NCBI GenBank assembly: GCA_051294905.1
Contig: CM119373.1
Span: 3,534,001 to 3,598,000, forward strand
Reading direction: 5' to 3'
DNA length: 64,000 nucleotides
Origin: Botryllus schlosseri
Lineage: Eukaryota
In this document: positions 9,001-63,902 of the stretch, in pieces
Layout of the letters: each line of letters opens with the position of its first letter
How positions within the stretch are numbered: the first letter of the stretch is position 1
The notes under the pieces: generated by a model
What the model saw: the letters and a program-made list of their open reading frames with translations, nothing else
Database searches by the model: none
What the model was told of the DNA's origin: nothing
Program-made: the position numbers and the translations under genes

Positions 9001-12000
9001 AAACTTGCTAAAAGTTGCGTGAAGAATCGAAAAAACTTGCATGAAAAACCGAAAAAGCAAAAAGTTGCAACATAAGAATCCTCCAAACAGCTCAACACCA
9101 TACTGCATAACTTCTGAGCATTTAGAAATTTGCCGGAAGCTGTAAAAAAAAGTCGAAAAAGTTGCAAAAACTTGCCCTAGTGATAAATTTTGCTCATTTA
9201 TCAGCTATGAAGCAGTTAAACCGCGATGCTCGACTTGGAAATCGCTGATCTATTTTGTGGAATTTGATACTCCAAAATAGGCTTGTAACCCCTAGTTTAT
9301 CTGTTTGAACAAACAAGGGTGAGTTGAACTCATCTTGCACTCCATAATGAAGTGCGAGCCCTGCCCACAGCTGGTCACAAAGTGCAATGAAATAAGTACG
9401 GTCTAAAAATACCAAATTATATTCAGTTTGATCTAGAGCTGGCATTATATTCATTGCAGTCACACGAAAGCTAGTCCTAATTATAACACATAAATAGACT
9501 AAGTTCATGAGAGAATAGCCTGACAAACTATGAAGTGAACAGACAACAATAGACCACACTTACTCCTTTGTTCATCCTTCGTAGCGTCACCTCGACATGA
9601 TACTCCTGATCTACGTGAATATTAACCCACGAGCTTTTCACACGAACCCCAACTCCTGCACAAGAACAACATAATCGTAAACCGATCGAAATACGATGCC
9701 GAAAAGTAATTTACGACAAAACAGAATGGCCATCGGTAACATTTTATCAGGGTTGTAACCAAGTCACAAAGCTCCGAGACACAAGCCATTCTCACTTTTA
9801 TGGTTTTGACTCGAGTCAAGTCGAGTCATTTCAATTCAGCACCGAGTCAAGTCCGAGTCCAAGTCATCGAGCAGAGGTTCGAGTCCAAGTCATGGTATTA
9901 TGACTCGAGTCCGAGTCCAAGTCATTGTGTTGACTGCTCAGTTTCCAGTTAAAGTCTTGTAAACCCACTTTTTATAACTCTGTTTGTTGATATTGAATGG
10001 TTCGCATTTATATATACTAATTTTCCTCACTTTTAACTGTTTCTGGTCGCATTTTCAAGTACCAGTACCAATAGACGTAACCCCAATAGTGTGGTTACTT
10101 TTCTGTTCTTCGAAATTATAATGAAATGTCGGTCTTGGCCGTCTGAGTCTCGAGTCAAATGACTTGGTTCGAGTCATGCGCAATGACTCGTGTCCAAGTC
10201 GAGTCATTACCGTATTTTGAGAAAATTAATCGAGTCATCAAAGTATCGTGACTCGAGTCGATTCATTACTCGAGTCATTACAACCCTGCATTCTATGGTG
10301 CAGAGGGGATCATTTTTGCAGAAATCAAGCGCGCATAAATACGAATTCGGTTTCATTACTTTAACAGAATAATATATATCCATGACCCCGCAAAACAGAA
10401 AAGATAAAAATAAAGACACCCATCACGGACAGTGCCGAGGTCTTATTCTCACCGTGAGTGGCCGGGACGGTGACATGTTTCAATTTGGGATCGTCCCAAA
10501 CGCCCTTGACCCTCAAGGAAACGTGGACTTCCGGAAGATTTTTGATGTAGTCACAAATCTGAAAAGCACAAGATTTATTTTAACCCGAAAAACGGATGCT
10601 TCTGACCTAAAATTTTTTACAATTTTTGGCATTAAAAGACTTAATTTAGACCAAATGTAAGAAAATTAGGTGTTTTCGCACATGATGTTGGAATTGTACC
10701 ACTTATCTTCATTTCTGGTTGAGACTGTCTATCCTTACAAAGTAGCTAGGCCTGAGCTAACTCTTTTGACTTGAAAACTTTCAAATTTTTACATGAAAAA
10801 CTTCGTTTTAACGAAATCTGGACCTATGAAGAATTCCAGTAGTTACATCACGCATTATGGGAGAAGTAATTAAAATTTGTTGCGGTACAACGAAAGATAC
10901 TTTCCTACATTTATCGGGTAGAAAGTGTCTGTCCTTACTAAGTAGCTTGCCAAGAATGGAGAAAGAACGTTCAACAGCAGCAATTGTTGGCTGACAAACC
11001 GTGTTGCTTCATTCTGACAATGGTGGCTAGTGGCTACATCGTCACTTTTTCATCATGCGCTTCTTGATAAAAGAACCAATGCCCTAGCAGTCTTGCTTCA
11101 GTTAGGATATTGTGGTACGTTGAGCATAACACCATGTCAACCTATTTGTTTCATCTGGCCGTTTATGATTCACAATGAGCAGACAATGGGCCGTCTACAA
11201 CGATAGGCTTATAAAGTAGGCTACAAGCTGTAAAATGTCACATGATAAGCTCACCGACAGCGCAAACATCTACGATCCAAACGAAATGCAGGCTGCAAAT
11301 TTTTTTTACTTTATAAACAATTTTGACCAATTTTTTGACCTAACGCTACAATTTTGACAAAATATACACTTATTTTGATGTCACAAAAAAACTTCCCTAA
11401 TCATCACTTAATTACACATCACATCTGTACTAAACTATTAAACGATATAAGTCATTGCGGTAATTGATAAAAAATGCTGCACACAGAGCATGCTCCATTC
11501 AATATAGCATAGGAGCACCTATTATTCAACTTGAGTGACATTTATTGACTGCAATGCTGCATGAAGTCTATAAAAACCTCATGTTGATGTAGAGAAAAAA
11601 TGTTCCAGAGCGTAAAAGAAATTTGTAACCAAGTTTCGTCCACCTTTAGTTGTTATACACTAGACTGATTTCTAATGATACTACAATGCCAGTCAATGGC
11701 ATTGTGACCACAGTTTAAGGGCATACCGAAGTTGTTTCGTCCGTGATGTCACAGATGATGGAATTAACCATATCAGAAACATAAATTCCATAACTTGAAA
11801 ATTTCTTTCCGACTCATTCCATATTTTTCAATCAAGACCGAGTCAAGTCAAATAAGTTAGGGCTTGACTTCGATCCGATTATTCGAAATCTCATGCCAGT
11901 GACGTCATATTTTGTGATACGATTGTTGATATACAATGTTCTTTCCACTTCTCTACTAGTTGCTGACGATTGCACCTGACGAGCATCAGCCGAAAATATT

Positions 12001-46118: not shown

Positions 46119-49100
46119 ATGATATCCAATCTCTCTTTTCTGTGCCTCTGCCTTGCAAGTTACATCCAAGGTAAGTAACTTACAGACCCTAAATTCAGAG
46201 TGATATTCATGGATATTCATTCAGATTCACACTCACAGAAGAGTGGCTCAGATGTTGGTATAAAGCGACTAGGATCTGACCGGTCAGAAATTCAATGCAC
46301 ACGAGGACAAAATTGCACATGGGAAGTACCGCAAGATGTGTTTATGCAAAACTACACAGTCATTATGCTGGTTTATCACAAAGAAGCCACACGACTTGAA
46401 TCGGACTGCAATGACCAGTTGGTGTTATCAGGTATGCTAAAATTCGTAGATTTAAAGAATAATGATATCATTAAAACGTGACATAATCAACATTACAATG
46501 TCCAGTAAGTGGTGCAAACTAGGTGCAGCGTGCACTTAGACTGTCTAACTGACAAATTAATAATCAATACCCTGAGACTTATACATTTTGGCGGCATGCC
46601 GACACCGGCTCTAAATCATTATAAATAATGTCTTCAATGACAAACACGTGCGCACTGCGCAGTGACACCGGTACAAATATATCAATTTCAAGAAGACAAA
46701 AAATAACCTTTATTATTTTGTATCAGGGCGCTTGAGTGATGGATGTCCAAAAGTGAACCACACTTGCTTGGTTTATCAGACAGAGGACTATTGCACTTCA
46801 AAAGACACGTCCTTACGCATTGGGAAAGAAAACTTCAAATGTAACAAGACAATGTACAATAACTCATTTAAGGACACCGTCAGGATACAATATCAAACAT
46901 CTAATTCCTCAGGAAATTTTAGAATGATATACATTGCGATTAAATGCAGTGAGTATACAAACTAACATGATCAATGTCCGCAATTAAGCTAACTAATGAT
47001 CTGTCTTGAACAGATAAGCCTCTGATCAATTTTGGAGTAAAGGCAAGTGTTGAAAAAGGTAAGAGCATGATCGTGTGTATCAACTATGTATCTGAAGCAT
47101 CCGCCAGCTGCTTCTAGAAAAAGCTGGGCAAAATTGGAAACTTGATCATTCGAATGTCAAACTAAATTACCTTTATTATTGCAAAATTTAGCGCAAATTT
47201 ATCGAAACACTTCTTTCAACCTGACAAAAGCTACAACGCAACAAAATTGTTTGGATTTTTGAGCTTTCCTATAGGAGAGGTCGAAGTTCTCTCAAGTAAA
47301 ACCTCTCAAGAATCAAAAGTGGGTCAAACTCACCCAAGTACTAGAAAAGAGGATAAGTAGCCTACTTCATTGCTGATGGCTTCTGATCAGAAAGAAATTT
47401 AGAAATTTTTCAGCGTATCCAAATCAGATCATAATTTTAATTATTGGTGTGCACTTTTATTCAAATTATATGAAAACTAGCATTACTGACTTCACAAAAA
47501 ACTTGGAAATTGAATTAAACTCTGAATTGGTAATATACCGCACATTTGAATAGTGTATACTCATATTGAAATGAACCCCAATATTTTCGACTGGGGTAAT
47601 CCTCAGCAAATAGTAGAGAATTGGAAAGATACGATTGCTGATATACAATGTTCTTTCCAATTGTCTACCAGTTGTTGACGATTACCCCTGACGAGTGTCA
47701 CCCGAAAATATCCGGGTTCATTTCAATATCAATATACCATTCAATTGTGTATTGAAGTTCTGCACCTCCAAGAAGCTCTCAAATTAGCGTTGACTCTAAT
47801 AGGCAGAAAGGGGATATGTATGTACACCAAGCCAGGTTCGTTTCGTATGATACAATTCTCTTGCAGCCTTTCCAGGAAAACCAGAAATTAGATTATAATT
47901 AAGATGAGTGTATTGAAATATTCTTGGAATCTGATTAGAATTAAAGTACTGACATTATATCAATTGTTCGAATTCGACAATTGCAATCATCTAGTTGTCC
48001 AAGTTTGCGTCTGATGCGTACTAAAAAGACTACTTCAAGTTCATATGGATAGGTAGAACAGTGTGCGAAAGAGAGACACATTGCATATGTACTGGACTCG
48101 AAAGAATAAAAATTGACATGCCCAAGCCCTGCCAAAATTAAATCCAGTTCAAATATGTACATTCCGTGAGACCAAAAAGAATGAAATCCCAGATCTACAT
48201 CACATTAGAGATGACTTGGTATTTTCTCAACCATACCTATCTCCGTGGGTCAATCAGGACGTAACAAATATGGAATTTCCACTAACGTACCTAACATTGT
48301 ACTGTATGTTATACTGTGAGATGGCCTATTAAGGTTTCAAGCTGGCTTTCCACAGTGTAAAACAGTATCAATTTTATAGTTATCTTTGATTACTCAACTT
48401 TTGATGGTAATGAGTGTGCTCGTACAGTGTACATATCGAACATTCAAAACTCACACTATTTAATGGGTAACAAGGTACACAGAATACACCTACATCGTGG
48501 ATATGACAAGATTTCCTGTCATTCATGATTTCAAACTACGGTTCCGACCACACTAATGGCATCCTCCGATATATCCAGGAAATTCACAGGGAGAAAAGAA
48601 CGTGATAGTTACTGACAATAACGATGATAAAGAGGAGCTATCTGTGGAAAAAACTGTAATCACAATCGCCGCTGTCATGATCGGGACCATTACGTTGGTT
48701 TTAATTGCAATAACAATGTAAGTTTTATTTCTTTGTTAACTTTTTACTTCAAATTCTACTGGCTAGTTTGAATAATTGTTAGATTGCTCAAAAAACACTG
48801 CATACCAAATCTGGCTCAATTCCAACCTGTAGAAGCGGAGCTATTAAAGTGAGAAAATTCTGAATTTGAAATAATAGTAGTACTATTACTAAAACCATAC
48901 TATAGTATGAAAGGTATATAAAATCCCAGCACTCATATATTCAATGTCACTCTGATATTCTGTGAGAGCTGTCAAAATTATGCAATAATTTTCCATACCT
49001 AGGTGATCGTGATACTGGCATAAAATCACAAATAATATCAACTTGAGGAAACTAACTACGAGCATAATGTAAATTGGAATCGGAAATTAATTAAAAAATG

Positions 49101-49666
49101 TCTTGTTGTAGTTACACCACCTGTCTGCCCCTTGCTATTGACCATCTAAGGGTATATTCATATTGAAATAAACCCAAAAATTTTCAGCTGACACCTGTCA
49201 GGAGAATTTGTTAGCAACTAGTATTACTTCTGAGTGTTAATAATTGATATGTATTACGATTAGTCGTGGCGAGTGTCATCCGAAAATATTTGGGTTTATT
49301 TCAATATGATTATGTTATTAAATTGCATAGTTAACTTCTGTACCTCCAGAGTCTATTGAAATTAGAAATATTGTTGACTTATTCATTCATAGTTGGGAAA
49401 TACACGAATTAGATATCCGTCCCTTAAAACCAATTGTAGTACACTTTAAAAGTGAGATTATAAAACGATTACAACACCTACCTCTTTTCAGAATAAAAAG
49501 GGAACGATCGAACAGAAAGGCAAAAGGTATCGAACTCGCCGAGATTTCAAGAGAGGAAATGGAAAGCAAACAGGATCTTCCGTATGACGATTCAGACCAA
49601 GCAGACGAAAGCTACGAAACTCGGAGGGTGGAGGAGCTGCATGAAGCTGATTATTATCAAGTATAG
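46119..49666 (+). CDS. receptor gene A: type-I membrane protein, 8-Cys CUB-like ectodomain, Tyr-containing tail (264 aa)
   Basis: Exons 46119-46170 (signal MISNLSFLCLCLASYIQ), 46225-46431, 46727-46948, 48579-48717 (TM TVITIAAVMIGTITLVLIAITI), 49492-49666 (tail ending ADYYQV*); all GT-AG, phases 1-1-1-2, no stops; acceptor at 48579 least certain. Confidence 0.82.
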
Positions 49667-49976
49667 AAGGGGCTCTGATCAAGATCCCAAACGAAATAGA
49701 AGAGATACCAATCTACTGCTAACTGCATTTACTCAAAGTAGACTCGAGTGTTACGTCAAAACTCTTGTAAACATATTTTACCCCAATTTTTCATGTCGGA
49801 TTGAAAGTGCTAAGCATGTTTCCTTTTCTATTAAACATATTTTCTCTGTACTAGAAATTATTCGTACTTCGTTTGTAAGTGAATGTTGTTGTGTTAAAGC
49901 TACGAGTTGTTCTTCGCATTGCCAACTGTATATTTCTTAAACCGCTCTGATTTAGCGTTTCCGGTTTTAAAGACCG

Positions 49977-49982
49977 AATAAA
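49977..49982 (+). promoter_or_regulatory. candidate polyadenylation signal, gene A
   Basis: AATAAA ~310 nt after stop. Confidence 0.45.
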
Positions 49983-52346
49983 GAATATAGACACTTGTGA
50001 ATTTATTTGAAATCTGTTTATTTGAAATCTGGTTCTCTGTAGGCGTCACCTTGTGTCAAGGCCAAAGTCTTAAAGCTGTTCAATTTTGGGTCACATCTGC
50101 TGCATCTTTGTATATCTACCTCAACGATACTTTAGTGAATTTTCCGTTCAGCTCAATTCGGCAGATGATATTTAAGTGATCAGCATTACAAACAGTATTG
50201 ATTACTTTAACGACGAGGATAGGAATCACAATGACAGGAAATTAATGATACAATCAGTTGCAATTACGTAAGAAAGGATTGAATTACGTAAGAACAAATA
50301 AGCTCTCGCAGCAATATAAGCACAGGGGACAAAAGAAACCCGGTTTTTACATACATATTCCAATGAAGTAAAAACATGGTTAAATTTGTTCTGACATGAA
50401 TGATACATGACAACAAACAGATTGTTTCAAAGGGAAATTAATTACTAACACACTACCGGGTGCCTAATCTATAAGCAGCTGTGGTAAAAGAGTTTCCAAT
50501 GGATTGCGAAACTACAGTCGGAAGGAAAAACTTGGAAGATACAAATGTATCATTAGGCATGAACTGGAAATATTGGAATTATGCTCTAATAATATATCTT
50601 GTGAGCAGCATAAAATAGTTATCAGTGTGGTAAAGAGTCGCAAAGTATCAATGTCATGATTCAGGACCTGTGCAGTGGATACACTATATTCACCCAAGCT
50701 GTGTAAATCTAAGAATAAGCACGAGAACCCCAAAACATATTGAAAATGATGTTGAAAGATGATCAACATGTAGCCTACTGCAGATTTGATGTCGGAAATT
50801 TCATTGCCAATTTAGAGACATCTAATGTTGTGCTCAATATCATAGAATTTGGAGTTCACTATGGTATATCACGATTTCTTGTCAAATGCCACATGAAAAT
50901 CAAAACCAAGTCGATATGCAAACAAGCTTTCTGCACAGTATGTTGTATACAAGGTTTTAAATGGCTTGTGGTGTGTTGTAGATGAGGTAAAGTGAAAGTA
51001 TACTGAAGCATATCAAGGATCAAATCCAAAATAGCTATACAAAGCAGTGATCAATGTCAAACCGGGGTTACCGTTTCCAATACAGGAAGTTACTAATCAG
51101 GTCGAGCTTTCTTACAACTGTGCAAAGGATTAGTTGCATTCCGTCACCTCATGACCGAAAAATACATATCACTAAATTGCCAAGCATTGTCCAAGTTTCA
51201 TAGATATTTTCCAGAATAATCCAACAGCAACATCCATTAGTTTCTGTAAGTAGTTCATGATAGTTTTGTGAGTGCGTTATATGGGTTACGTGTGGCAGCT
51301 GGCATAAGGTATGATATTGCTGATATTGCTGCACGTCCCCATTACATCACTGCGTCACATTATCGCAATAATTAGCGTCACTAAGCTAGGAAGCGCGGAT
51401 CATTGACGTACATTAGCTGAGGTAACTTAACGTACCGCGAAAGATGCGTCTGACTGGCGTAATGTGGGCTTTGCCGACATGCTAGTCACAGTGGCTGCAA
51501 AATAAGTGTCTGACAATTGTGCTTAGGTTCAAAAGTCACGGAGTTGCAAAATTATTTACCACAAGCTAATCAAATGTGACGGTGAAGCAATTGATGTAAA
51601 AACGAGCTACGATTATGTAACACGTCAATCACATTACAACGAGTAATCACAAAAAGGCCCGCATTTCACATGACAATATGGAATTGCGACAAACATTTTA
51701 AGATATATTCACACAAACTACAGTGCCATTACTATAAATGTTGTATATACCAGATAGGACGCATTTCAATATGTATTAGCTTTTGTATACAGGCCTACCG
51801 GTAAGAATGCATATCGGTATATAACAGCTTTGCTTGAACAATGTGAAAGTTGATATTTAGCAGAAACGTCCCAGGAAGTATTTCACTCATCATAATAGTC
51901 AGTTAAGTGACGGCCGTGCATTAGCCTCAAGCTTCCTGTACGAAATATTCGCCAGACTGGCATCAGAAGAATGAACGACTCATCATAGGTTGACGCACGT
52001 GCATAATTGATTTCCGTAGTGCTGAGACTCTAAAGGAGAGGGTATGGCGTCCAAAGTGAGTCTTTATTCATGCGACTTCAGGATATATGCAGACTATATT
52101 GTGTGTGAGAAATTTGGTTAAGAGACCGCAAGTATTGAGTCGATGTTAAAGAAAAGAATCATCATTCGATAATGCAAACGTACATGCTTTAATTTTATGA
52201 TTGGAATTGCATTCTGAGTGATTTAGGTTGAAATGGATATACTTGAAAGGGTGTAGTTTACAAAAAAAAACTTGATATCCTATCTTCCTTCTTACAGATC
52301 AATAATTATCCATAAAACTACACGGAATACCGCCAAAACAAAATCA

Positions 52347-55300
52347 ATGGGAATTACAAAGAAGCTTTTACTGTGGCTGTTAACATTGTGCGTGACAGGT
52401 AACTACATTTTAAAAATGATCAAAAACATAGACTGGTAGCAAAGTTAGGTGATATTAACCTTCATTTATCATTTAGATTACTACGAACATGGACAAGCAT
52501 CTGTGATATCACCAAAACTGACTTTAACATCAAACGGAGATGACAACTCGTGTCAAGATCGGACTTTCCTGGTTCTTCACGATGGCAAAGTCAAAATATC
52601 ATACGAGGGTGCAGCCACCGTTTCTACATGTTCGTGGAAGATACCACACATATCACAATCTAAATTCTCTGTGATTGCATACAAAGTCAACAAAGCGGAG
52701 TTGAAAAAGGAAACAGAATGTCTCGGACACCTAAAATTTCCAGGTAGGCTCTATTCATGGATTAGGATTAGAATGGATTAGCTTGTAGAAATAGACTTTG
52801 TCATTGCAAAATACTCGTTAGCTTACAGATAAAAATAGAAATGTGTATTGGTGATTATGTATTGATTACTAGATAACTTAATATTCTTTGTAAAGGAAGT
52901 AATTGAAGTCCATGAGTATAAAATAAAGCAAGTGGATATCAATTTGTAGCCATATTTTACTGATATTACGTATCGCAATAGCTAATACGAACATTTAAAG
53001 TACCAACTATAAGAAAGATTAATTCCGACCGTTAATGGTAATCCTTTTCAAAATAATTTACAAGTGTTGCACAGTTGCAAAACCCCCTGGGATTAGTTGT
53101 CTAATCTTCTTGATAAAGGAAGTAATTGAAATCCAAAAATCATGTGGATATTAATTTGCAGCCATTGATATTACGTACGACAATAGCTAATACCAACATT
53201 TATAATAACAAATATAACAAGGGATAATCCCTACCGGTAACGATAATCCTTTTCATAACTATTTACAAGTGTTGAACAGAACAGTTGCATAAAGCCCTTG
53301 AATTAGTTGTGATCTACATATCGTACTATCATACAGGGACATAGGAAAGATAAAACTTGTGTATCTGCTGGTATGGGTTAAAAGCTTCTGCCAATATACT
53401 GCACTAATATTATGGTAAAATCACATCGATAATTGGATTAAAGAAAACACCCATGTATTCTCTGCCATAATCTGACAAACTTTCCAGGAAAAGGATACAG
53501 ATGTGCATTGTCCAAAGGAGATTGCTTTATATACACTACGAAAGAAAACTCTTGCAACACCATTGACATATTAAGAGCGATTAAGTCCGAACTTCAATGC
53601 ACGGAAGCGGTAATGATCCGGGTGCCTTTGGAGGAAATGTCAACGTTATCCTTTCAGTCAACGAAGGAAGACTCCTTCAAAATAAGTTTCGATATCACGG
53701 CGAGTTTTCACAAGTCTGCTTGCGACGAGACAGACCCATTATCAACGCCTGGTGAGTTTTAAGAATACGATACAAATCCCAAATTTCAGAGCATGGCACA
53801 AGAAATTCCATTTGAATAGCACTGTCCAATCAATGGATTATGGACCTACTCTATTTATTATACTAGTACAATTGAATAATATATTCATCTTGAAAAAAAC
53901 CTAAATATTTTCGAAATGAACATAAGCGATCTCTTCGTCTCAAAATTTCATGCCAGCGACATCATATTTGGTGATACAATTAATGATATCACACCGTTCT
54001 TCAAACTTCTCTAGTACCGTGGTTGGTGACGATTACCCCTGACGAGTGCCAGCCAAATATCTTTGGGCTTATTTCGATATGAATATTTAATCCAATTGAA
54101 TTTTGAAGTTTTCTACCTCCAAGAAGCCTTAATAATAGTACAGCAAAGATAATGTCTATTTTTTTATTAGATCTATCTTTTAAAGTACCATTTCGGAACA
54201 TTTTCTAGCACACATGACAGATAATGACGAAACCAAACCAGACCACCAGTCAAGCAATTCCACCATTGCGGATTTCGACTATATGAAAAGTGACGGCGAA
54301 AATACATTAGGATCGTCTGAGCTATTGAAATACGCGTTGATGATCGGTCTTCCTGTGGTGCTTATCGTCATAGGAGTTATCGCTATTATTTTGAGGTGAG
54401 TGTTCCGGAAACATTTTTCTAAATTTATGGAAATTATAGGGGACTGCATCCATTCTAGTCCGTATTGTTGGAAATAATCTAATTGATAATCAATAATAAT
54501 CTGCACAGCCAGGCACAAAGATCCGTTGTCTCAGTTACCCCAGAATGGCACACAGATTGAATATATTTGAGTTACAATCCCGAGTATCGAGTCATAATAG
54601 GTTTATTTACTGAAATAGTACTTGCAAATATGTAATTAGCACTATCGCAACAACACACTTGGTAAAAATACTATACTGTTCAGACATATTCATTACAAAA
54701 ACTTGTCTATTATGATAATAGCCATTTTCTAGTAGTTATTTGTATGTTTTAGTAGATAATTGAGCAAAGCAGCTTTATTTTCATTGCTTCGGCGATGGAG
54801 ATTTGAAGGGAAACTAAGTTTATTACCGAGCCAGATCTACCACCGAATCTAATTTGAATGTATACACTCACTTCTACAGCAGATGTGATTAAAAATGCTG
54901 ATCCTTCGAAAGGTCAAATAGATCTTTACTGCACATTTTGTTTCGATGAAATATTTAAAAATACTTCTATTTTAGATCAAAAAAGAAGAAACAACCACCA
55001 TCACATCACCAATCGCAAGATGCGATGCTAGACACCGTTTCAAGAGACATCGAGCTAAACGAATACGAGCACACCGAAATAATTGTGGAATACCAACCCA
55101 ACCCCAGACATTCGTTCATATCCTTTCCCGACAGCGAGAACCAGAGTGCCGTCGTAGTAAACTCATACAAACTAACACCCGGCACAGCGGAAAGCAACGG
55201 ATACCTGGTGCCAATGAAAGACGAGCCGCGATACACTGCACCGACTGAGGAAAAACAAATACAACCAGTTTCAGATTACAACAGCGAGCCATTTCAGGAA

Positions 55301-55450
55301 GAAGACAACCAAGGGTACTTCGTGCCACCGGAAAATGGTGAAAGAGACACAGCTTCTATATACAACGACGATGCATTTGTCGATGATGAGAATCCATATG
55401 AAGTCGTAAGAGAGGTTTACTACAGAAGTGAATCTTATTCCGAAGATTAA
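52347..55450 (+). CDS. receptor gene B: type-I membrane protein, 8-Cys CUB-like ectodomain, 12-Tyr cytoplasmic tail (414 aa)
   Basis: Exons 52347-52398 (signal MGITKKLLLWLLTLCVT), 52477-52743, 53488-53751, 54209-54395 (TM YALMIGLPVVLIVIGVIAIIL), 54976-55450; same phases 1-1-1-2 and same 52-nt first coding exon as gene A. Confidence 0.88.
52885..53312. repeat. diverged ~220-bp tandem duplication in gene B intron
   Basis: taaaggaagtaattgaa..gatattacgta..tttacaagtgttg..attagttgt occurs twice (~52885 and ~53107). Confidence 0.75.
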
Positions 55451-56096
55451 ATCGGCAGAACGTTTAATCCGAGGGATTAAAATGAAGGCTGTGATCAAAC
55501 AAGGATCTTGAAAGCAAGACAAATGTGACAAGCGTCCACAGTGACATCATGAAATGGGTCACAGATTCCACACGTTTGCAACTAGAGTCGGGTGCAATGA
55601 TTCTAGTACTGGAATAGGAATCGAGCATTAATTGCAATCTTATTTATGTACTGGGACAAGTACACAAATTATAGACACACCTTGAAACATCGATTGGCCG
55701 TAGTACCAAAATATGAAACACCAGGCTATGGATGGTCTTGACAAGATTTTCTTTATGCCGTTAATATCTGTCTATCAATATTTCGATGTGCTAGCATAAG
55801 AGGTACACATTTCTTACTGTGTGATGTCCCAATGATTAGTACTTGAACAAGCGATTTGGTATCAAATCAGTCTGATACCCGACTTCACCCCAGCCCTACT
55901 TGCACTTGTAAAACCGTAAAAGCATAAATATGAATCAAGCCAGGGTGTTTGACACTAATTGCGCATCTGTGTAGTGATTCTTGTAACTAAAACTATGGCA
56001 AACTGTTCCTATAACTTCTGTGTTATTAAAGTTCAATTTGAGGTGTCATGATTAGTTTATAATTATCGTCTGTGAAACTTTTGATATACCGGTACA

Positions 56097-56102
56097 AATA
56101 AA
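56097..56102 (+). promoter_or_regulatory. candidate polyadenylation signal, gene B
   Basis: AATAAA ~650 nt after stop; a second one near 56150. Confidence 0.4.
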
Positions 56103-57777
56103 TTTGATCTTTTTATACACGTGTGCATGTATCAATAGAAATTTATGCAATAAATAATTAAATGGACAGGGTCAGGTGTACAATTTTCAATCCACTAGAA
56201 GGGCCAATAATTTCTCAACGCAAGTTAATATATTTTGAAAACCGCAAGTATTGAAAAGTCCAGCAATAGAAGAACACATGAAGGATTTATCAGTTTAGAA
56301 AGATATTATATTTACAGTCCCTTTACACTGATTTATTTTCCCAACAACACTTCCATGTATGGATTAAGCATACTGTTAAAACACAATTCCTTATATTGCT
56401 AATATTGACAGCATGGTAGGCCTACTTACCAAGCGAATTAAAACATGTAATATGGAGCTTTTGCTTAGGTTGAACAAGTCAAATGAAAGTGACGAATCGG
56501 AGTATATGACAAAGACTTGACAGCCTTACTTCAACATGATTTATGAACATTCGAGCACTGAAACTAATCAATAAAACCTCTTCCTGCTTAATGCACCACG
56601 ACTATTGAGCATGCAATATAAGTCAATGTTTTGAAAACTTTTTTCTGAAAACTGACACTAGTGTGTTCACAGTCGGGTGAGGAATAGCATTACACAAAAT
56701 GCAGCTTTGAATTGATCATAGGACAGCCTTCCCACAAGTAAATCTAATGTATGGAATAAGTCCTTTCAGGAAGGAAGCTGCGTGTCTACCAGATGTTTAA
56801 GGAGCAAAAAAATGTAATGTCAGGTTATCAAGTTAAATACCGAAAGCGTATCAGGCCAGCACTTGCCAAAGTATCAAGGCTATTTACTTATAAGTGTGCC
56901 ATCCAAATTTATAATGCTAAGACAATGATAAACACATACACAATTTTGAATCCATTCTAGGATCCAGAGTAATCAAAACATTAACTCCAGCTGATAGAAT
57001 TAGCAGGCCTAAATTGAGTAGTGGAGCATCGTGCATTGAAGATTTAATTTGAGTATAACAGAATATCGTCAAATAATTAAGCTGAAAGTGACTGAGATAT
57101 ACTCTTGTTATACAGACAGAGAATGCAACTTTATCTATAGTATATCTGCATGCAGAAGATTGTCTAAGTGTCCCAAGTGATTACTTAGTTTCTGTAATTA
57201 TAAATATGCTGTAATGAAAGCCTTTCTTGTAACATTTCTTGGTAATTCTCACTGGTCATGTATTTATATATCAATTAAAATACCAGAACTTATGTCGTAG
57301 GTTTGTTAGCTGCAAGAGAAACCATTTGAAAGGAACTTCTATATTGAATCTAATGCCAATTACCATAATTTATAATTGACCATGTACTTTATTTGTTAAT
57401 AGGTCCTTGAAATAGATGGGTTGGAACCTCCCAAGTTGAGTTGTGGAATTTATTTCAAGTAGGTGCAACAACTTTTCCTCAGATAAGGTATTCGAGTATT
57501 TGATACTTTGGTGGTGCTATTACAGACTCTTAACGCACACCGGAAATTTAGACGATAATTTTCGTGCCGAAGCATTCTCATAGAATTTCTGAAAATATGG
57601 ATACATCTGGAAGAGTCTTAATCATCAAGATATTATTTATTCTCGTGATAACATCTCTCTTCCTTGGAGCAAGAGCAGCAAAGAATTGTAGGTATTCAAA
57701 GAAGCTACCGGTGATATTATAGGAATAGGTTACAATGAAAGCTGTATACAGATATCAATGATATTGAACGAATTGAA

Positions 57778-60700
57778 ATGCCGCAACGGAGTGAATTTTG
57801 TTTGTTCTTGCTAACCGGTATATTGATCAGGAGACACATTTTGAATTATGGGGATACGTAGAATGTTACGTACTACAATATCGTAGAAAAACGTGGCCAT
57901 GATCATGAATGCTTCTGAAATGATGTTGCTTTGCAATTTGCATTGTCAAAAGATTTATTGAAGATTTATTGAAGAATTACAAAGAGATCTTAACATGGCT
58001 TAAGAGACATTTGGAACGTTTACAGTTAAACGTAGCATAATACTTCCAACGCAAAAAGGAACACAACAGTTCTAGCCAAGTTTTTATTAACTTACCGGCA
58101 CACTTTGCCATGCAGAGGGTCAAATTTCCAAAAAATACCAATTGAATAAAACATGTTGATTCCCATCACAATAATGCCTGTGCTCTAGTAGAACTGTAAA
58201 ATTGCTAAGACACAAAATTGCTTAAGTAAAACCTTACAATGCCATGGCCGAGTGATATGTAGTTGATGTTATACTGTCTAACTGATTAGGTAGAATGTCA
58301 TTTTACTACCCAAGAGTGTCACCAGAACCTGCACACTGATATTTCTGTGTGAAATTAATAAGTTAATGAAATATGGGTATGGCAAGTGTGTAGAAGTGAT
58401 AATTTCAGTCAATGGTTCGAAATAATTACTAACCTGGGAAACACTTGTACTAATCTACAAGCCTTCAGGAACTCCAAATTGCAAATAAGCTTAGGAATAT
58501 TGGAGATTGAATGGATAATTTAAAAGGAGCAGGTTCGGTTTCAATACCAACCTCCCTGCCATTGCACATGACAAACAGACACAACAGCCACAATTCGAAT
58601 GCTGCCAAGACCTAATTGCCTGCATCCTATGATTGCCAGGACAGGCGCGTCATCAGGAATCTTATGTATCAGTTGAGTGCATGTCTTGATCTCCAGGAAA
58701 CACCTGAGAGAGACTGGCTCAGGGCCGGGGGGTTCCCAGAAGCAATGGATAAGACGCACTGATTAAGTTCTCTGGGGAGCAAATGTACCTGATTCATGCC
58801 GAAATTATTATTAGTACACATATTGCTTTCGTAGTGTCGATACTCTTCAAGACAAGTTGCGACGAATTTCAAGAGCATTTAAACAATCCCCTCTCGGCAA
58901 GTTTGACAGTGGCTAACAAGAGTGACGAACGATGTACGTGGAACATGCGAAAACTGCTGCATCTACAAAAGCACGCCATAGTGTACAAGACGAACAGTAT
59001 GGATTGCGTTGGGGGACAAGTCACATTTGAAACCGATTATCGTAAGTGCTCGTTATCTGAAATATTGATGTCAGCCATTAGTAGCTAAAAAAATATTGGC
59101 AATTTTCGTGACGTCACAACATGGTAGTAGAGAGTCAGAGAATTGTAACCTGCGACTGTTAGACTGTAAATATTGATAAAATTCTTTTAGCTTAAAAGTA
59201 GAAGTAATGTGGAAGTAGAAGTAATGTCGTAAATTTATATTCAAGTACATATAAAGATTTCAATGGATAGTTTTGCATAAAAATTGAAAAGTTTTACAAA
59301 GAAGTAGTACAAAATCAAAACAATTCGAGCAATAAGTTCAAGTAGGGTAAACCTATTTGAGTACTCTGAAAAGGGAGTACTTCGTTGCTGACCGTCACTG
59401 ATTACAGCTGTTTAGATGCAGTCTTTCTAGTTTATTTCATTTGCAAGCACAGCAATGGCTGTAAAGCAGAGATGAGCATGGATTAGGATTAGGTTTTGAA
59501 AAAACAGGATTTGTGAAATTTTGTCGGATTTGGATTGGATGAGGATTACAGATTTTTTTGTGAACAGATTTGGATTTGGATTGGATTTACCGATTTTCTG
59601 GGAGACTGATATGTCGTGTGGAAAATGGCGACAAACTTTATTCAAATCACTTATTAATGTACTTATGGTACACTGCACTATGGTACACTCGGTGCCAATG
59701 AGCATGAGAGGTACAGCCATATGCCAAGTCATCGTAAATCAATTGCTGGCTGTGAGAGAAAATCTCCCAATTCCTCCCTTGCATAAATTAGCATTTTTTT
59801 CTGAATTTCAAGTTGGAATCGGATTAGGATTGAACATGGACTTGAATATACAAAAGTTCTGGATTAGGATTTGGATCAGGAGTTAAGGCTTGGGATATGG
59901 ATTGGATTAGGACATAGAAATTCCAAATCCGCTCATCGCTACTGTAAAGCATATCAAATAAATGCTCTGAAGTTCTGTGAATGGGAGTTGAGCGAGATGC
60001 CATATCTTTTGAACATCATGTTAATAAATCGAGGTTACCGTGTTTGTTTTAGGACATTGCCTCACAACGCAGGCGATATCGCCCCAACGTGGGCGATGGG
60101 GAGCAAAAATGTTAGAATGTCTAGTGAAATATCTTTAATCAACCCAACCAAAAACCGCAGAAGAAGACTGCTTATTCTGTATATGACGCGAGAATTGGCT
60201 CAAAAATAGGTCAACCCAACGGAAAGTAGGTGCGGAAACCGGTTTACCGAGCACCGACTCGGAAAATGAGCCTTTTTTTAGTCGATTCACCAGCGATCGG
60301 AGTGAGGTGAATAAAGTTTCTGTTTATTTGTCCACTTTTTCGGATCTGTAAATATGAGGGCTTGCGTCGAGTTTGATAAGGGGGCGATGAAGAGTCGAAA
60401 AAGGTTGGGAATACTGATCTAGGAATTAAATGTTGAAGGTATAAGTACCAAAAGGATAAAATGTATAAATGAAGTTAGGAATCACCGATGTGAGCAGAAA
60501 ATATTTTCTGAACAATACCCCTCTTTTACAGGGAACAAGTCGGTGACAGAAAATTTCTGTAATCAATCCAAGTGCCTCGTATTTATGAGAAAGGAAAGCG
60601 AGAAAATTTGCAACTCTTCCGTGCTGAATGAAACGGTGCCGCAGATATTCGGCGACTGTCACCAATACGTGAGCCACGTCAAACCGTCGACCATGAAAAT

Positions 60701-63700
60701 TGTGGCAGGAAAAAGTACGAGAAGCTTCCGACTTGAATATCAACTTTTCAACTGTAGGGATGAAGATATTGAGTCACATCATACAGGTAGGGTTGTAATG
60801 AATTGAGTTGTAATTTTTTGTTGACTCGGGTTATATTCTTAAAAATGGAGTATGACTTGACTTGATTAATTTCGTGTATTGACTCGACTTGTACTCCAGT
60901 CATTAGGCATGTCTCTGCTAAATCATATGAAACGAGATATTCTATATGATTTGATTCAAGTCTCGGGTAGCAGGATCGACATTTGAAAAAAAGGCCCAGA
61001 AACTGTCCTTTAACGGTGTGAAAAAAAGTTAAGAGTGGAAAAAATGAATATATAAATTGAGGCCTTCAATATCACCCAAAAGTTTCAAAAAAGCAAGTTA
61101 AGCCATCTTCTTGAACTTGAACCGAACGTTGAACAGTATGGCCTGGACTCAGACTCGAATCTCAACACTATGACTTGCACTCGAACCTTTGCACTGGCTC
61201 TTGACTTGAGTCAAAACTATAAAAGTGAGACCGACTTGAGACTCAGAACCTTGCGACTTCTTTACAATCCTGTCTATGAGATAATCGCTAATTCATCAAG
61301 ACTTAGAAGAGATACCGACACTAAATAGAGACAGTCTAACATACATTATGGCAGCGGTTCTCAACCGGGGGTCCGCAATTTCAGGGGGTCCGCGAGATCT
61401 CTAAATTTTTAAAATGGCTGATCACGCATAATGTTCGTTTTATTTTTTTAATTTGAGAAAGCAGTAGGCAGTTTCGCACCACAACTGCTAAAACCTCATG
61501 ACTCATATCATCATCATAATCGTCTGACATGAACTATCGTAGTGCGGAAATTCATTTTTATTGCCAATTTTCCAATAACCTGCTGATACATACGTATTGC
61601 TGTTTAGAGACGTTCTGTTGGGGTTTGTGAAAAAAAATAAAAATATGGAGATAGTAACGTCCATCAGGGTGACTTCTTAGTGTCTGCGAAACCTTCTCGA
61701 TTTGAAGTTGTCAGTCTCATCAAATTAGTGAACAGTGGTTTGAAATAAAAATTTCCGAAGTATTTCCCTAACTGGTCCCAATGTAGGGATTGAAACCTCG
61801 CCACGAAATCCATTTTATCCTGTGATATACCTAACCACTATTTGAACAGCTTCTTGGAGGTACAGGACTACAATATAGAATTGTACAGTATAGTCATATT
61901 GAAATGAATCCGATTATTTTCAGCTGACACTCGTCATTAATCGGACAATGATATACTTGTTCTTAAAGCTCGGCTATCAGATTTGGCGCATTCTTCTTGC
62001 GGATGCCCTATCTTCAAGGCAAATTTTTCGATGCGCAAGGAGTGTTTCGTTGCTATCAAAGCATTACGCCCCAACCCTGAAATTCATATCACCAGTTATA
62101 TTGGTACGAAGCCTTGTCTTGGTAATGTTCAATTGTTCATGGTCGAAAATGTTTGCTCGTAAATATATAAGTACACCCGAACAGAACAAGTCGTTTCATG
62201 ACAGTCCTTCTCAGGTTGGAAAACTTGGATCCATTCTTTGGCGCATAAAATTTGTAGATTAGATTAGATTAGGATTTCACTTTGACGGTAGAAACTCTCT
62301 GCAAATCGATCAAAATGCCATCGCGGACCGAATCCGGCCTGTGGTCCGAATGTTGCCCGTCCCTGCGCTAGATGCTGGACGTGATATGTTCATAAAATAT
62401 ATGTTTCTTCATTTTGTTGCCATAAATGTTGCGATCCCACCAAAAGTATCGTCGGAAGCGTCATGCGTTAATATTGCATCAGCCTCCATCTACCTTTGCG
62501 GAAATGGTTTTTGGCACTCCTCGTTTCATATCAAAACAAAGACGCGGATTTTCAAGACACGACCACGTACTTCAAGAAACACAGCAGCAAAATTAGATTT
62601 GAAATAACAAAAGTCTACCAATTTCTACATAAATAGTATGATGTTATTTTCAAGAAAAATCAATATTTTGCTGTTTATCACAAGCCTATAAAGTTCATAA
62701 TTGCACAAAACAAATGAAGGTCGCACCATAATAGAGCTAAAATTGAACTAAATCTTGAGGGGGTCCGCGAGGGTCCGTGACGGTCAAAAGGGGTCCGCGA
62801 AGCCAAAAAGGTTGAGAACCACTGCATTATGGCAATCGTGTTTGCATTTTATTTGATCAGCACTCAAAATGACTTGGAAGTCAGGTATTTCCACCATGAG
62901 TGCAAAGATGATAAAACAGCCACTGTAATAAGTGTAGATTTTATGCTTTTCAAGGAGAATCTACTGTCAACATATCGACAACATCGGCACCTTTACCCAT
63001 GACGAAACCTACTGCCAACAGCATCAGCGATAACATCAGTGAGAATGACCTTTAAAGTGAAGGATAATTGTTTTCATAAGCATGAAATAGTCTTTTCTTT
63101 CAGTTCAACTTGAATATGTTTCATTCATTTCCTTCAAAAAATATACGTGCCTATATTTTTACTTCTAGACTCCATCACCTACCATTGAACCTTCTAATGT
63201 CATGAACGAAATATTGGTTTTAATTTTTATGAATTCTCATTCCAGCGAGGGAGTCTACCACTGCAGGCGGACATGCAATGAATACGACACGAAATCAAGC
63301 AGACGAGAGTTCTACTGAAGGTTAATTACAAGCTTACTTCCAGTACTCAGAAAACTATTAGTAATCTTAACGAGCGGGTGGTGTTGAACTGGTCCTTGAG
63401 AAACAAATTCCACGGAAATAGTCATAGCTAATATCTTTATTCAATATTTGAATAGTATACTTATATTGAAATGAACCCGGATATTTTCGGCTGACAGTCG
63501 ACAGGGATAATCGTGAGCAACTAGTAGAGAATTTGAAAGAACATTGTACATGAACAATCGTATCACAAAATATGACGTCACCAGCATGAAATTTGGAATG
63601 AGAGAGCGTTCAATGCACTATTTCCAAGTGGTACACGAACTCCTTCTGTGGACAGAGTTTTGGCCAGTGTATTCAATATTTGCGAGTTTTGATAAACAAA

Positions 63701-63902
63701 TTTCTGAATAACTACAAAATTTATTTGAATACTAAGTTTTCCTTGGAATAATTGGCATAGTGAAATCTAATTTCCGCTGCTTCTACTACAAGCATACACA
63801 CTATTATCTGTTTGCTCATGTTATCAGGTGCATTCACAACCATCGCGATCCATACTACTTTGCCAAATGCGAAGGAAAAAGATGTGAAAAAGATACCGCT
63901 AG
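57778..63902 (+). CDS. receptor gene C (3'-partial): 8-Cys CUB-like ectodomain plus Ser/Thr-rich stalk exons
   Basis: Exons 58835-59041 (207 nt, same length as gene A exon 2; RCTWN) and 60532-60786 carry the 8 Cys; putative signal exon 57778-57817 (MPQRSEFCLFLLT, weaker); phase-1 stalk exons 62955-63038, 63246-63320, 63828-63902; TM and tail not in window. Confidence 0.7.
59467..59941. mobile_element. hAT-type MITE with GGATT subterminal repeats
   Basis: TIRs cagagatgagc / gctcatcgcta; perfect 8-bp TSD ctgtaaag (59459-59466, 59942-59949). Confidence 0.9.
60788..61272. mobile_element. degenerate MITE family R1 copy abutting a gene C splice donor
   Basis: tagggttgtaatg start at 60788, tacaatcctg end at 61272; body similar to other R1 copies; no TSD match. 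Confidence 0.7.
61352..62824 (-). mobile_element. hAT (Charlie-like) deletion derivative with transposase relic and nested fragments
   Basis: TIRs cagcggttctcaacc / ggttgagaaccactg; perfect 8-bp TSD cattatgg (61344-61351, 62825-62832); minus-strand relic ~62060-62235 FSNLRRTVMKRLVLFGCTYI/YEQTFSTMNN with frameshift (hAT FGSTYxCEQxFS motif). Confidence 0.9.

What the first reader, a model, noticed from the sequence alone, without database searches (positions are those of the whole stretch)
46119..63902. Undescribed family of highly diverged 8-cysteine CUB-like type-I receptors
Seen: genes A, B and C share the phase-1 split of the ectodomain into two exons and the pattern C..C-[TS]-W..C | C-x4-6-C-[LF][VI][YF]-x5-8-C-x14-15-C..F-[RK]-[MIL]-x-[YF]..C, yet few other residues match. 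A and C are rich in N-glycosylation sequons. Established: canonical CUB domains have up to 4 Cys with CxW and a terminal F-x-x-x-Y strand. Inference: a CUB variant with two extra disulfides in an inserted loop. Tandem clustering, strong ectodomain divergence and tyrosine-based tails are hallmarks of immune, allorecognition or gamete-recognition receptor families.
Basis: partly seen in the sequence, partly recalled or inferred. Interest (0 to 1): 0.85.

Follow-up and report, generated by a model that had tools for sequence, protein, structure and literature searches.

The report
Sea-squirt tandem array of divergent CUB receptors
Three neighbouring sea-squirt genes are the first members of an undescribed tandem array of about 15 surface-protein genes whose outer part is a much-altered CUB domain, a known protein-binding fold, here with an extra disulfide-rich insert; their function is unknown.

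Summary
Genes A, B and C each carry the reported cysteine pattern, and a phase-1 intron splits the ectodomain. For A, every splice junction is confirmed by RNA from three studies.

The three genes are the 5' end of a larger family. About 15 same-strand genes span roughly 125 kb (C3:3.580-3.706 Mb). There is also a partial duplicate at 15.93 Mb and one distant copy on another chromosome.

B and C join the family by sequence. A joins only by profile comparison (hhalign P 2.4e-6, above all 300 shuffles).

The CUB reading is supported by three lines:
- The exon-1 profile hits cubilin CUB domains at E 3e-5.
- Protein-language-model neighbours are mostly CUB clusters.

Pfam's CUB model does not match, and Foldseek gives only generic jelly-roll hits.

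Eight cysteines are not universal: paralogues have 6, 8 or 10. Tyrosine-rich tails occur only in A and B. Most paralogue pairs show purifying selection. An immune, allorecognition or gamete role is untested.

Verdict: a real, apparently tunicate-restricted new variant of a known domain family, of moderate interest.

The parts
46119..46170 (+). Gene A exon 0: start codon and signal peptide (MISNLSFLCLCLASYIQ), phase-1 donor
   Evidence: Joint 46170/46225 (GT..AG) in contigs of X6 and X1 and in raw reads of X21; ORF.
46225..46431 (+). Gene A exon 1: N-terminal half of the CUB-like domain (IQC, NCTW, LESDC)
   Evidence: Joints 46170/46225 and 46431/46727. The polymorphisms listed here are 6 non-synonymous and 2 synonymous.
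46727..46948 (+). Gene A exon 2: C-terminal half of the CUB-like domain with the Cys-rich insert (5 Cys, FRMIY strand)
   Evidence: Joints 46431/46727 and 46948/47014. hhalign alignment to the family runs across the exon boundary.
47014..47058 (+). Gene A 45-nt phase 1-1 mini-exon (short stalk)
Evidence: Joints 46948/47014 and 47058/48579 in X6, X1 and X21.
48579..48717 (+). Gene A transmembrane exon (TVITIAAVMIGTITLVLIAIT), phase-2 donor
   Evidence: Joints 47058/48579 and 48717/49492; hydropathy 2.74.
49492..49666 (+). Gene A cytoplasmic tail exon: basic stretch, then an acidic stretch with 4 Tyr, ending DYYQV-stop. The CDS totals 279 aa.
   Evidence: Joint 48717/49492 in 13 raw reads plus contigs; assembled CDS is in frame.
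52347..52398 (+). Gene B exon 0: signal peptide (MGITKKLLLWLLTLCVT), phase-1 donor
   Evidence: ORF and GT donor. The SP exon ends in ..TG| as in D, H, L, M and N. Predicted; no RNA was laid on it.
52477..52743 (+). Gene B exon 1: N-terminal half of the CUB-like domain (SC, TCSW, EC)
   Evidence: AG/GT sites and in-frame assembly of a 414-aa CDS. Predicted.
53488..53751 (+). Gene B exon 2: C-terminal half of the CUB-like domain with the insert
   Evidence: Joins the exon-2 family (E 2e-4 to M). Orthologue P0005 in another species is 52% identical and pairs with B at 100/100 support.
54209..54395 (+). Gene B stalk plus transmembrane exon (LLKYALMIGLPVVLIVIGVIAIIL), phase-2 donor
   Evidence: Hydropathy 3.17; AG/GT sites. 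A second in-phase acceptor lies 12 nt downstream and could not be excluded.
54976..55450 (+). Gene B cytoplasmic tail: 157 aa, acidic, 12 Tyr, including three YxxP (YLVP, YTAP, YFVP) and two YxN (YNSE, YNDD) motifs
   Evidence: Translation; no Pfam family. The motif reading is inference.
57597..57687 (+). Gene C exon 0: signal peptide (MDTSGRVLIIKILFILVITSLFLGARAAKN)
   Evidence: ORF, hydropathy 3.32 and phase-1 donor T|GTAGGT. An alternative phase-2 donor/acceptor pair also fits. Predicted.
58835..59041 (+). Gene C exon 1: N-terminal half of the CUB-like domain (SC, RCTW, DC)
   Evidence: BLAST hits to downstream paralogues at E 1e-9 to 2e-7; HMM family ex1; C|GTAAGT donor.
60532..60786 (+). 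Gene C exon 2: C-terminal half of the CUB-like domain with the insert. The next exon (TM) lies outside the window at C3:3598605-3598706.
   Evidence: tblastn to D at E 1.3e-8 and to E at 3.4e-6; BLAST 1e-11. TM exon with a phase-1 acceptor and phase-2 donor.

Best explanation
A, B and C are three real genes at the 5' end of a tandem array of about 15 genes, all in the same orientation, in an ascidian genome.

Each gene encodes a type-I membrane glycoprotein with this plan:
- a signal-peptide exon;
- one highly diverged CUB domain encoded by two exons split in phase 1;
- a short to long Ser/Thr-rich (mucin-like) stalk;
- a TM exon ending in phase 2 in A, B and C (clear TM exons were found for A, B, C, D, E, I, N and O);
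- a variable cytoplasmic tail.

The CUB domain keeps the canonical cysteines: C1, C2 (C-x-W/F), C3 (DC..GYL-like) and C4. Between C4 and the next strand it carries an insert of about 36 residues (one strand plus one helix). Extra disulfides probably pin this insert: C5-C7, which are invariant, and C6-C8, which are lost together in one subfamily.

Inferred function:
- The CUB module, held away from the membrane, binds an extracellular protein ligand, as CUB domains do in Kremen, neuropilin, cubilin and C1r/C1s/MASP.
- A, and above all B, could pass the signal on through phosphorylation of their acidic Tyr-rich tails and recruitment of SH2 adaptors, in the manner of CDCP1 and DCBLD2.
- Members with short basic tails would more likely act as co-receptors or adhesion molecules.

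Shown here: gene structure, family membership, fold class, transcription and splicing of A, and purifying selection on most paralogues. Inferred only: ligand binding, disulfide pairing and tail signalling.
For: - Gene structure: A's junctions are confirmed by RNA and its CDS is in frame at 279 aa. B assembles in frame at 414 aa with AG/GT sites.
- Shared exon plan: the same phases (1,1,1,2) occur in A, B and C, and SP exons ending ..TG|GT recur across members.
- Family size: the exon-2 profile finds 15 cluster loci plus 2 elsewhere, and the exon-1 profile finds 18 loci, all in the cluster or in the 15.93-Mb duplicate. Iterative HMMs link B and C to D-O. A links by hhalign at P 2.4e-6, above all 300 shuffles.
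- Insert: helix 100-110 and strand 88-93 lie between C79 and strand 116 of the model.
- Disulfide inference: C6 and C8 are present together in 12 sequences and absent together in 9.
- Selection: dN/dS is 0.15-0.55 in most paralogue pairs.
- Age: orthologues of three subfamilies occur in one other sample.
Against: - Pfam CUB (PF00431) gives no hit at E<=10 on the exon halves or on the full orthologous ectodomain.
- Foldseek against PDB, AFDB and the Atlas ranks bacterial carbohydrate-binding jelly rolls and Cry-toxin domains above or beside CUBs, with TM-scores of 0.3-0.5.
- The model is of an I/N-type orthologue from another sample, not of A, B or C, and its alignment was shallow (25 rows, many of them half-domains).
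- B and C gene models have no RNA check.
- No clear TM exon was found for F/G, H, J or K.
- There is no direct evidence on ligand, cell type or tail phosphorylation.
Confidence: 0.75

Rival explanations
1. The array is a polymorphic self/non-self, immune or gamete-recognition locus. Ectodomains would be under diversifying selection, alleles would differ between individuals, and the Tyr tails would signal recognition.
For: - It is a tandem array of strongly diverged ectodomains.
- In A exon 1, the polymorphisms listed between three RNA samples and the reference are 6 non-synonymous to 2 synonymous (pN/pS about 1), against 3 to 6 in the tail.
- L/M exon 1 has dN/dS of 1.14.
- In the same second species, the B-type orthologue is only 52% identical and the D-type about 39%, against 80-83% for the N/O type.
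- The ectodomains of A and C are sequon-rich.
Against: - Ten of thirteen paralogue comparisons give dN/dS of 0.15-0.55.
- Subfamilies keep orthologues across species, which differs from rapid birth-and-death turnover.
- Ascidians are highly polymorphic genome-wide, and no background rate was measured here.
- SNP counts are tiny, and 45 further differences were not listed.
- Tyr-rich tails occur only in A and B.
- There are no data on expression in blood cells, epithelia or gametes.
Confidence: 0.12
2. The ectodomain is not a CUB homologue. It would be another jelly-roll beta-sandwich (a carbohydrate-binding-module-like or galactose-binding-like lectin domain), and its CUB-like motifs would be convergent.
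For: - Foldseek's best PDB, AFDB and Atlas matches are agarase CBM, CBM6 and Cry-toxin domains, at E 4e-4 to 1e-2 and TM up to 0.50.
- There is no Pfam CUB hit.
Against: - Sequence evidence points to CUB specifically: the cubilin hit at E 3.2e-5 aligns C-x-W and the C3 'C..dYL' motif.
- The exhaustive structural alignment ranks CUB domains in 21 of the top 23 places, at lower rmsd (2.3-3.4 A) than most of the CBM-type matches below them (3.2-4.1 A).
- 62 of 100 language-model neighbours are CUB.
- Cysteine positions C1-C4 fit the canonical CUB pattern.
- CUB domains (DCBLD2, nas-23) also appear among the Foldseek hits.
Confidence: 0.1
3. Gene A is not a family member. It would be an unrelated small type-I membrane protein gene that shares cysteine spacing and exon phases with B and C by chance.
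For: - A has no BLAST or phmmer hit to any member from exon 2, and only E 0.003-0.008 from exon 1.
- It sits on a very long branch in the tree.
- Its C1 is displaced.
Against: - hhalign of A against the family profile gives P 2.4e-6 and 89% probability over 80 columns spanning both exons. None of 150 full shuffles or 150 cysteine-fixed shuffles came near (maximum 24.5 against 42).
- Exon phases are identical (1,1,1,..,2), and A sits next to B on the same strand.
Confidence: 0.04

Closest known systems
CUB domain superfamily (Pfam PF00431), e.g. Kremen1, neuropilin a1/a2, cubilin, C1s/MASP CUB1, TSG-6, spermadhesins
   Same: - C-x-W after strand 2 and a C..(G/D)YL motif at C3.
- A terminal F-x-L-x-Y strand.
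- Profile similarity to cubilin.
- The domain is encoded by phase-1 exons.
   Different: - No match to the Pfam model.
- An insert of about 36 residues (strand plus helix) after C4, with 2 to 3 extra disulfides.
- The acidic calcium-site residues of many CUBs are not evident in most members (by eye; not tested).
- The family was found only in ascidian-like samples.
CDCP1 (CUB domain-containing protein 1)
   Same: A type-I membrane protein with CUB-like ectodomain modules too diverged for the standard CUB model, and a cytoplasmic tail whose tyrosines are phosphorylated by Src-family kinases to dock partners (PMC4395315). The tails of A and B look like such docking tails.
   Different: CDCP1 has several CUB-like modules and is a single-copy vertebrate gene. 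Here there is one module per protein, a mucin-like stalk and a tandem multigene array. No sequence similarity was detected.
DCBLD2/ESDN
   Same: A single N-terminal CUB domain on a type-I membrane protein. From general knowledge, its tail is rich in YxxP motifs that recruit CRK/CRKL. B's tail has three YxxP motifs. The DCBLD2 CUB domain (residues 64-183) is among the Foldseek hits.
   Different: DCBLD2 also has LCCL and discoidin domains, lacks the Cys-rich insert and is not in a tandem family. The tail resemblance is at motif level only.
Lineage-specific tandem families of recognition receptors in tunicates (Botryllus fester/uncle fester, Ciona vCRL1 and Themis loci)
   Same: Tandemly arranged type-I membrane proteins with diverged ectodomains, in ascidians.
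   Different: From general knowledge, those families use sushi/CCP, Ig, PKD or fibrinogen-like domains, not CUB. No polymorphism-phenotype link or tissue expression is known for the present array.

Membership tests
CUB domain (PF00431) | Significant match to the curated Pfam CUB profile | tested here: not met
   No PF00431 hit at E<=10 for the exon halves of A, B and C, for H/I/N/O (only CUB_2 at E 0.18 for I exon 1) or for the full orthologous ectodomain L021:51-614.
CUB domain (PF00431) | Profile-level sequence similarity to a bona fide CUB domain | tested here: met
   The exon-1 family profile (A2) against PDB sequences hits cubilin CUB domains (3kq4_B) at E 3.2e-5, aligning C-x-W and the C3 region. 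The N-terminal half only; the exon-2 profile has no PDB hit.
CUB domain (PF00431) | Jelly-roll beta-sandwich of about 110 residues superposable on solved CUB domains | tested here: met
   [not shown]
CUB domain (PF00431) | Four conserved cysteines forming C1-C2 and C3-C4 disulfides | tested here: inconclusive
   The positions fit. C2 and C3 are invariant, C1 is present in 13 of 14 sequences, and a Cys follows just after the splice site in all. A's C1 is displaced.
CUB domain (PF00431) | Calcium-binding acidic triad (only in the cbCUB subset) | not tested
   By eye, A keeps LE..C.D, while most members have W-I-D-C..GYL. No structural or statistical test was done.
CDCP1 / DCBLD-type phosphotyrosine docking receptors | Cytoplasmic tail tyrosines phosphorylated by Src-family kinases and bound by SH2 partners | not testable with these tools
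   B's tail has 12 Tyr, including 3 YxxP and 2 YxN motifs; A's tail has 4 Tyr in acidic context. Motif level only.
CDCP1 / DCBLD-type phosphotyrosine docking receptors | Domain architecture (CDCP1: several CUB-like modules; DCBLD: CUB + LCCL + discoidin) | tested here: not met
   There is one CUB-like module per gene, followed by stalk and TM. No other Pfam domain was found.
Polymorphic recognition (immune/allorecognition/gamete) receptor families | Excess non-synonymous change or high allelic diversity in the ectodomain relative to background | tested here: inconclusive
   A exon 1 has 6 non-synonymous to 2 synonymous polymorphisms and L/M exon 1 has omega 1.14. Ten of thirteen paralogue comparisons give omega 0.15-0.55. 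No genomic background was measured.

The most novel reading that the evidence does not exclude
The array would be a so-far unrecognised polymorphic recognition locus of a sea squirt (self/non-self, immune or sperm-egg). It would be built on a new CUB variant whose disulfide-stapled insert and N-terminal half form a fast-evolving binding face, with A and B as the signalling members through phosphotyrosine docking tails.
Probability: 0.12. Interest if true: 0.8.

Novelty: new variant of a known kind. Interest (0 to 1): 0.45.

Why it matters
CUB domains are among the commonest extracellular protein-binding modules of animals. This family shows how far the fold can drift: it is invisible to Pfam, carries a 36-residue disulfide-pinned insert and varies between 6, 8 and 10 cysteines, yet keeps the core.

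It also adds a compact array of about 15 genes, apparently restricted to tunicates, to the list of surface-receptor expansions in the closest invertebrate relatives of vertebrates. Such arrays are where recognition systems have been found before.

If population and single-cell data showed allelic diversity and expression in blood cells or gametes, the locus would become a candidate recognition system. If not, it remains an ordinary lineage-specific receptor or adhesion family. In either case it is useful for annotation, because current protein databases hold only five unnamed fragments of it.

Tried and rejected
- Pairwise tblastn of the A, B and C exons within the window found no cross-hits.
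- Pfam on all exon pieces and on the full orthologous ectodomain found no CUB.
- The search for homologous proteins with gene I's long exon found nothing.
- phmmer of the orthologous ectodomain against PDB found nothing. The exon-2 profile against PDB found nothing. The mixed profile A5 against PDB gave only chance hits, because only the exon-2 columns became profile positions.
- Foldseek against PDB, Swiss-Prot AFDB, AFDB clusters and the ESM Atlas gave generic jelly-roll hits that do not decide the family.
- Alignments A3 and A4, made to feed AlphaFold, misplaced the distant exon-1 fragments and were discarded in favour of A5.
- The spliced proteins of A, B and C could not be folded. They have no reference and I did not type them.
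- The 15-nt gap after A's signal-peptide exon was rejected as an intron. RNA shows a 54-nt intron.
- The hydrophobic stretch at 63794 was rejected as C's TM in favour of the exon at C3:3598605-3598706, which has the family's phases.
- The sample file holding P0001, P0003 and P0005 was too large, so no DNA was returned.
- One literature search found no description of the family.
Full report
**Setting**

The window is G000:C3:3534001-3598000 of a 495-Mb assembly. Earlier notes of this scan call the organism a sea squirt. GC content is about 38% and the genes have introns. The finding covers three + strand genes between 46.1 and 63.9 kb.

**Checking the observation**

Stop-free frames and splice sites were read directly. 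A, B and C all have the same plan:
- a short signal-peptide exon ending in phase 1;
- two ectodomain exons joined in phase 1;
- a transmembrane exon ending in phase 2;
- a tail exon.

By my count of the translations, A and C carry 6 and 5 N-x-S/T sequons in the domain, and B carries none.

**RNA evidence for gene A**

RNA was laid on gene A using contigs of two RNA-like runs and raw reads of two RNA-seq runs, from three studies in all. Every A junction is seen with GT..AG ends: 46170/46225, 46431/46727, 46948/47014, 47058/48579 and 48717/49492.

This corrects two details. The first intron is 54 nt, not the 15-nt gap that a naive reading gives. There is also an extra 45-nt exon at 47014-47058. 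The assembled CDS is 279 aa and in frame.

B assembles in frame to 414 aa with canonical sites. C's first three exons do too. C's transmembrane exon is not at 63.8-63.9 kb. It lies about 600 bp beyond the window end (C3:3598605-3598706), with the family's phase-1 acceptor and phase-2 donor. B and C have no RNA check, because only one read-laying run was available.

**Chance or family?**

A, B and C share no BLAST-detectable similarity with each other, so the claim needed outside support.

C's exon 2 has relatives further down the chromosome. I fetched 119 kb downstream. There I found twelve more genes with the same two-exon ectodomain, all on the + strand, named D to O here. There is also a lone exon 1, and there are signs of decay in J and E.

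Iterative HMM searches link B and C to D-O for exon 2, and C to D-O for exon 1. B's first-round hit to M is E 2e-4.

Genome-wide, the exon-2 profile finds the 15 cluster genes, a copy of H at C3:15.93 Mb and one distant exon on chromosome C1. The exon-1 profile finds 18 loci, all in the cluster or the 15.93-Mb duplicate, two of them with stop codons.

A is the outlier, with only marginal hits from exon 1 (E 0.003-0.008). A profile comparison of the spliced A ectodomain with the rest of the family gives 89% probability and P 2.4e-6 over 80 columns spanning both exons. The score of 42 compares with a maximum of 24.5 in 150 full shuffles and 150 shuffles that keep the cysteines in place. A is therefore a very diverged member, not a coincidence.

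**Cysteines**

Three exon-2 cysteines and two exon-1 cysteines are invariant.
- The '8-Cys' set holds for A, B and C. In B the last cysteine is shifted.
- The H/I/N/O subfamily has ten cysteines.
- D-G and J-M have six. They have lost C6 (now Y or F) and C8 together.

This suggests a C6-C8 disulfide, although the joint loss is probably one evolutionary event. By elimination, C5-C7 would be the other extra pair, and C1-C2 and C3-C4 the canonical CUB pairs. This is inference, since I could not read coordinates from the model.

**What the domain is**

Pfam sees nothing. Three independent lines point to CUB.

1. *Profile search.* The exon-1 family profile hits cubilin CUB domains in the PDB sequence set at E 3.2e-5, aligning the C-x-W and C3 motifs.

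2. *Structure.* The family profile searched against 1.84 billion representative proteins found only five unnamed hits. One of them, P0002, lies on a 2,077-nt spliced transcript contig (L021, SRR32906212). This contig gave a reference for a complete ectodomain of an I-type orthologue, 68% identical to I in exon 2.
   - AlphaFold2 with a family alignment gave pLDDT 77.7 and pTM 0.75. The model is a beta-sandwich with one helix at residues 100-110.
   - The unmatched part is the stretch between C4 (residue 79) and the strand starting at 116. This is the Cys-rich insert (strand 88-93 and helix 100-110).

3. *Language model.* 62 of the 100 nearest ESM Atlas clusters are PF00431 CUB clusters.

I put CUB homology at about 0.85.

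**Rest of the proteins**

Clear TM exons exist for A, B, C, D, E, I, N and O. L and M have a TM-end plus tail exon, seen by paralogy. None was found for F/G, H, J or K.

Stalks range from a few residues (A, B, C) to several hundred Ser/Thr/Pro-rich residues, in one exon (H, I, N, O) or several (D, E).

Tails differ completely between members:
- A: 56 residues, acidic, 4 Tyr, ending DYYQV.
- B: 157 residues, 12 Tyr, with three YxxP and two YxN motifs.
- D, O and the transcript orthologue: short and basic.

'Tyrosine-based tails' are therefore a feature of A and B, not of the family.

**Evolutionary mode**

dN/dS values between recent paralogue pairs (Nei-Gojobori):

| Comparison | dN/dS |
|---|---|
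| Ten of thirteen comparisons | 0.15-0.55 |
| J/K exon 1 (J looks decayed) | 0.7 |
| H/H' stalk | 0.77 |
| L/M exon 1 | 1.14 |

These are therefore functional genes, mostly under purifying selection, with exon 1 often less constrained than exon 2.

One other sample (SRR25569784) holds fragments of three subfamilies. In a tree, B pairs with its fragment at 100/100 support. Identity is 52% for the B type, about 39% for the D type and 80-83% for the N/O type. The subfamilies thus predate that species split and evolve at very unequal rates.

Polymorphisms listed for gene A among three RNA samples are 6 non-synonymous to 2 synonymous in exon 1, 2 to 3 in exon 2, 3 to 3 in the TM exon and 3 to 6 in the tail. 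This suggests a relaxed or diversifying N-terminal half. However, the numbers are small, 45 further differences were not listed, and no genomic background was measured in an animal group known for very high heterozygosity.

**Mechanism**

Best-supported reading: these are cell-surface glycoproteins that present one CUB-type protein-binding module on a glycosylated stalk.

By analogy with Kremen, neuropilin, cubilin and the C1r/C1s/MASP CUB domains, the module would bind an extracellular protein partner. The variable N-terminal half and the insert are the likeliest specificity surfaces.

A and B could transmit through tyrosine phosphorylation of their tails and SH2 adaptor docking, as CDCP1 does (PMC4395315) and, from general knowledge, DCBLD2. 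Members with short tails would act as co-receptors or adhesion molecules. None of this was testable here.

The immune, allorecognition or gamete reading is a narrower version of this. I give it about 0.12.

**Comparison with known families, and novelty**

This is a member of the CUB superfamily by fold and weak sequence signal. It fails the curated Pfam test and differs by the insert and the extra disulfides.

It is not CDCP1-like or DCBLD-like in architecture. I found no paper describing it. Public protein collections hold only five unnamed fragments.

My analysis confirms this and joins it to A-C.

I class it as a new variant of a known kind. The interest is moderate: the family is real, apparently undescribed and restricted to this lineage as far as the data reach, but no function is shown.

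Noticed in passing
window 47500-47900 (intron of gene A); also 54030-54149 and C3:3633509-3633667: A repeated element inside the introns of A and B has word depths in the thousands in RNA-like contigs and gives chimeric joints to 44.86-44.90 kb and 49.15-49.28 kb. It is a highly expressed or very abundant repeat family.
   Followed up: no
window 63440-63674: A repeat of about 235 bp, MITE-like by its size and copy number, has more than 50 copies at 88-92% identity, spread over at least 14 of the large contigs. It overlaps an ORF that could be mistaken for an exon of gene C.
   Followed up: partly
L018:6604-8621 and L018/L019 joined coordinate 11070-11240 (C3:15.925-15.931 Mb): The H-I part of the array is duplicated 12 Mb away. 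The H-like copy is intact (75-79% identical, dN/dS 0.18-0.31 in the domain). The exon-1 profile match in the I-like region there contains a TGA stop.
   Followed up: partly
C3:3625411-3628518 (genes F and G): F and G lie about 250 bp apart, and no signal-peptide or TM exon of their own was found. They may form one gene with two CUB-like domains.
   Followed up: no
C3:3611620-3611700 (gene E exon 2 acceptor): At a run of eight A's, the acceptor that is used in D is out of frame in E. This could be a frameshift, an assembly error in the homopolymer, or use of a weaker upstream acceptor. E's stalk and TM exons lie about 10 kb further on.
   Followed up: no
L020:5454-5729 (C1:34822454-34822729): A distant exon-2-like ORF with the C-x4-C-IVY..C..C..F-S-L-D-Y..C pattern lies on another chromosome (E 4.4e-4). 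No exon 1 was looked for.
   Followed up: no
window 54976-55450: B's tail (noted separately as s1-281531) has three YxxP and two YxN motifs among its 12 tyrosines, which resembles CRK/GRB2-type docking sites. It has no Pfam match.
   Followed up: partly
C3:3599037-3599240: A candidate tail exon for gene C (KKRRQRRTYFHH...KIYDYL-stop) lies downstream of its TM exon. It is unverified.
   Followed up: no
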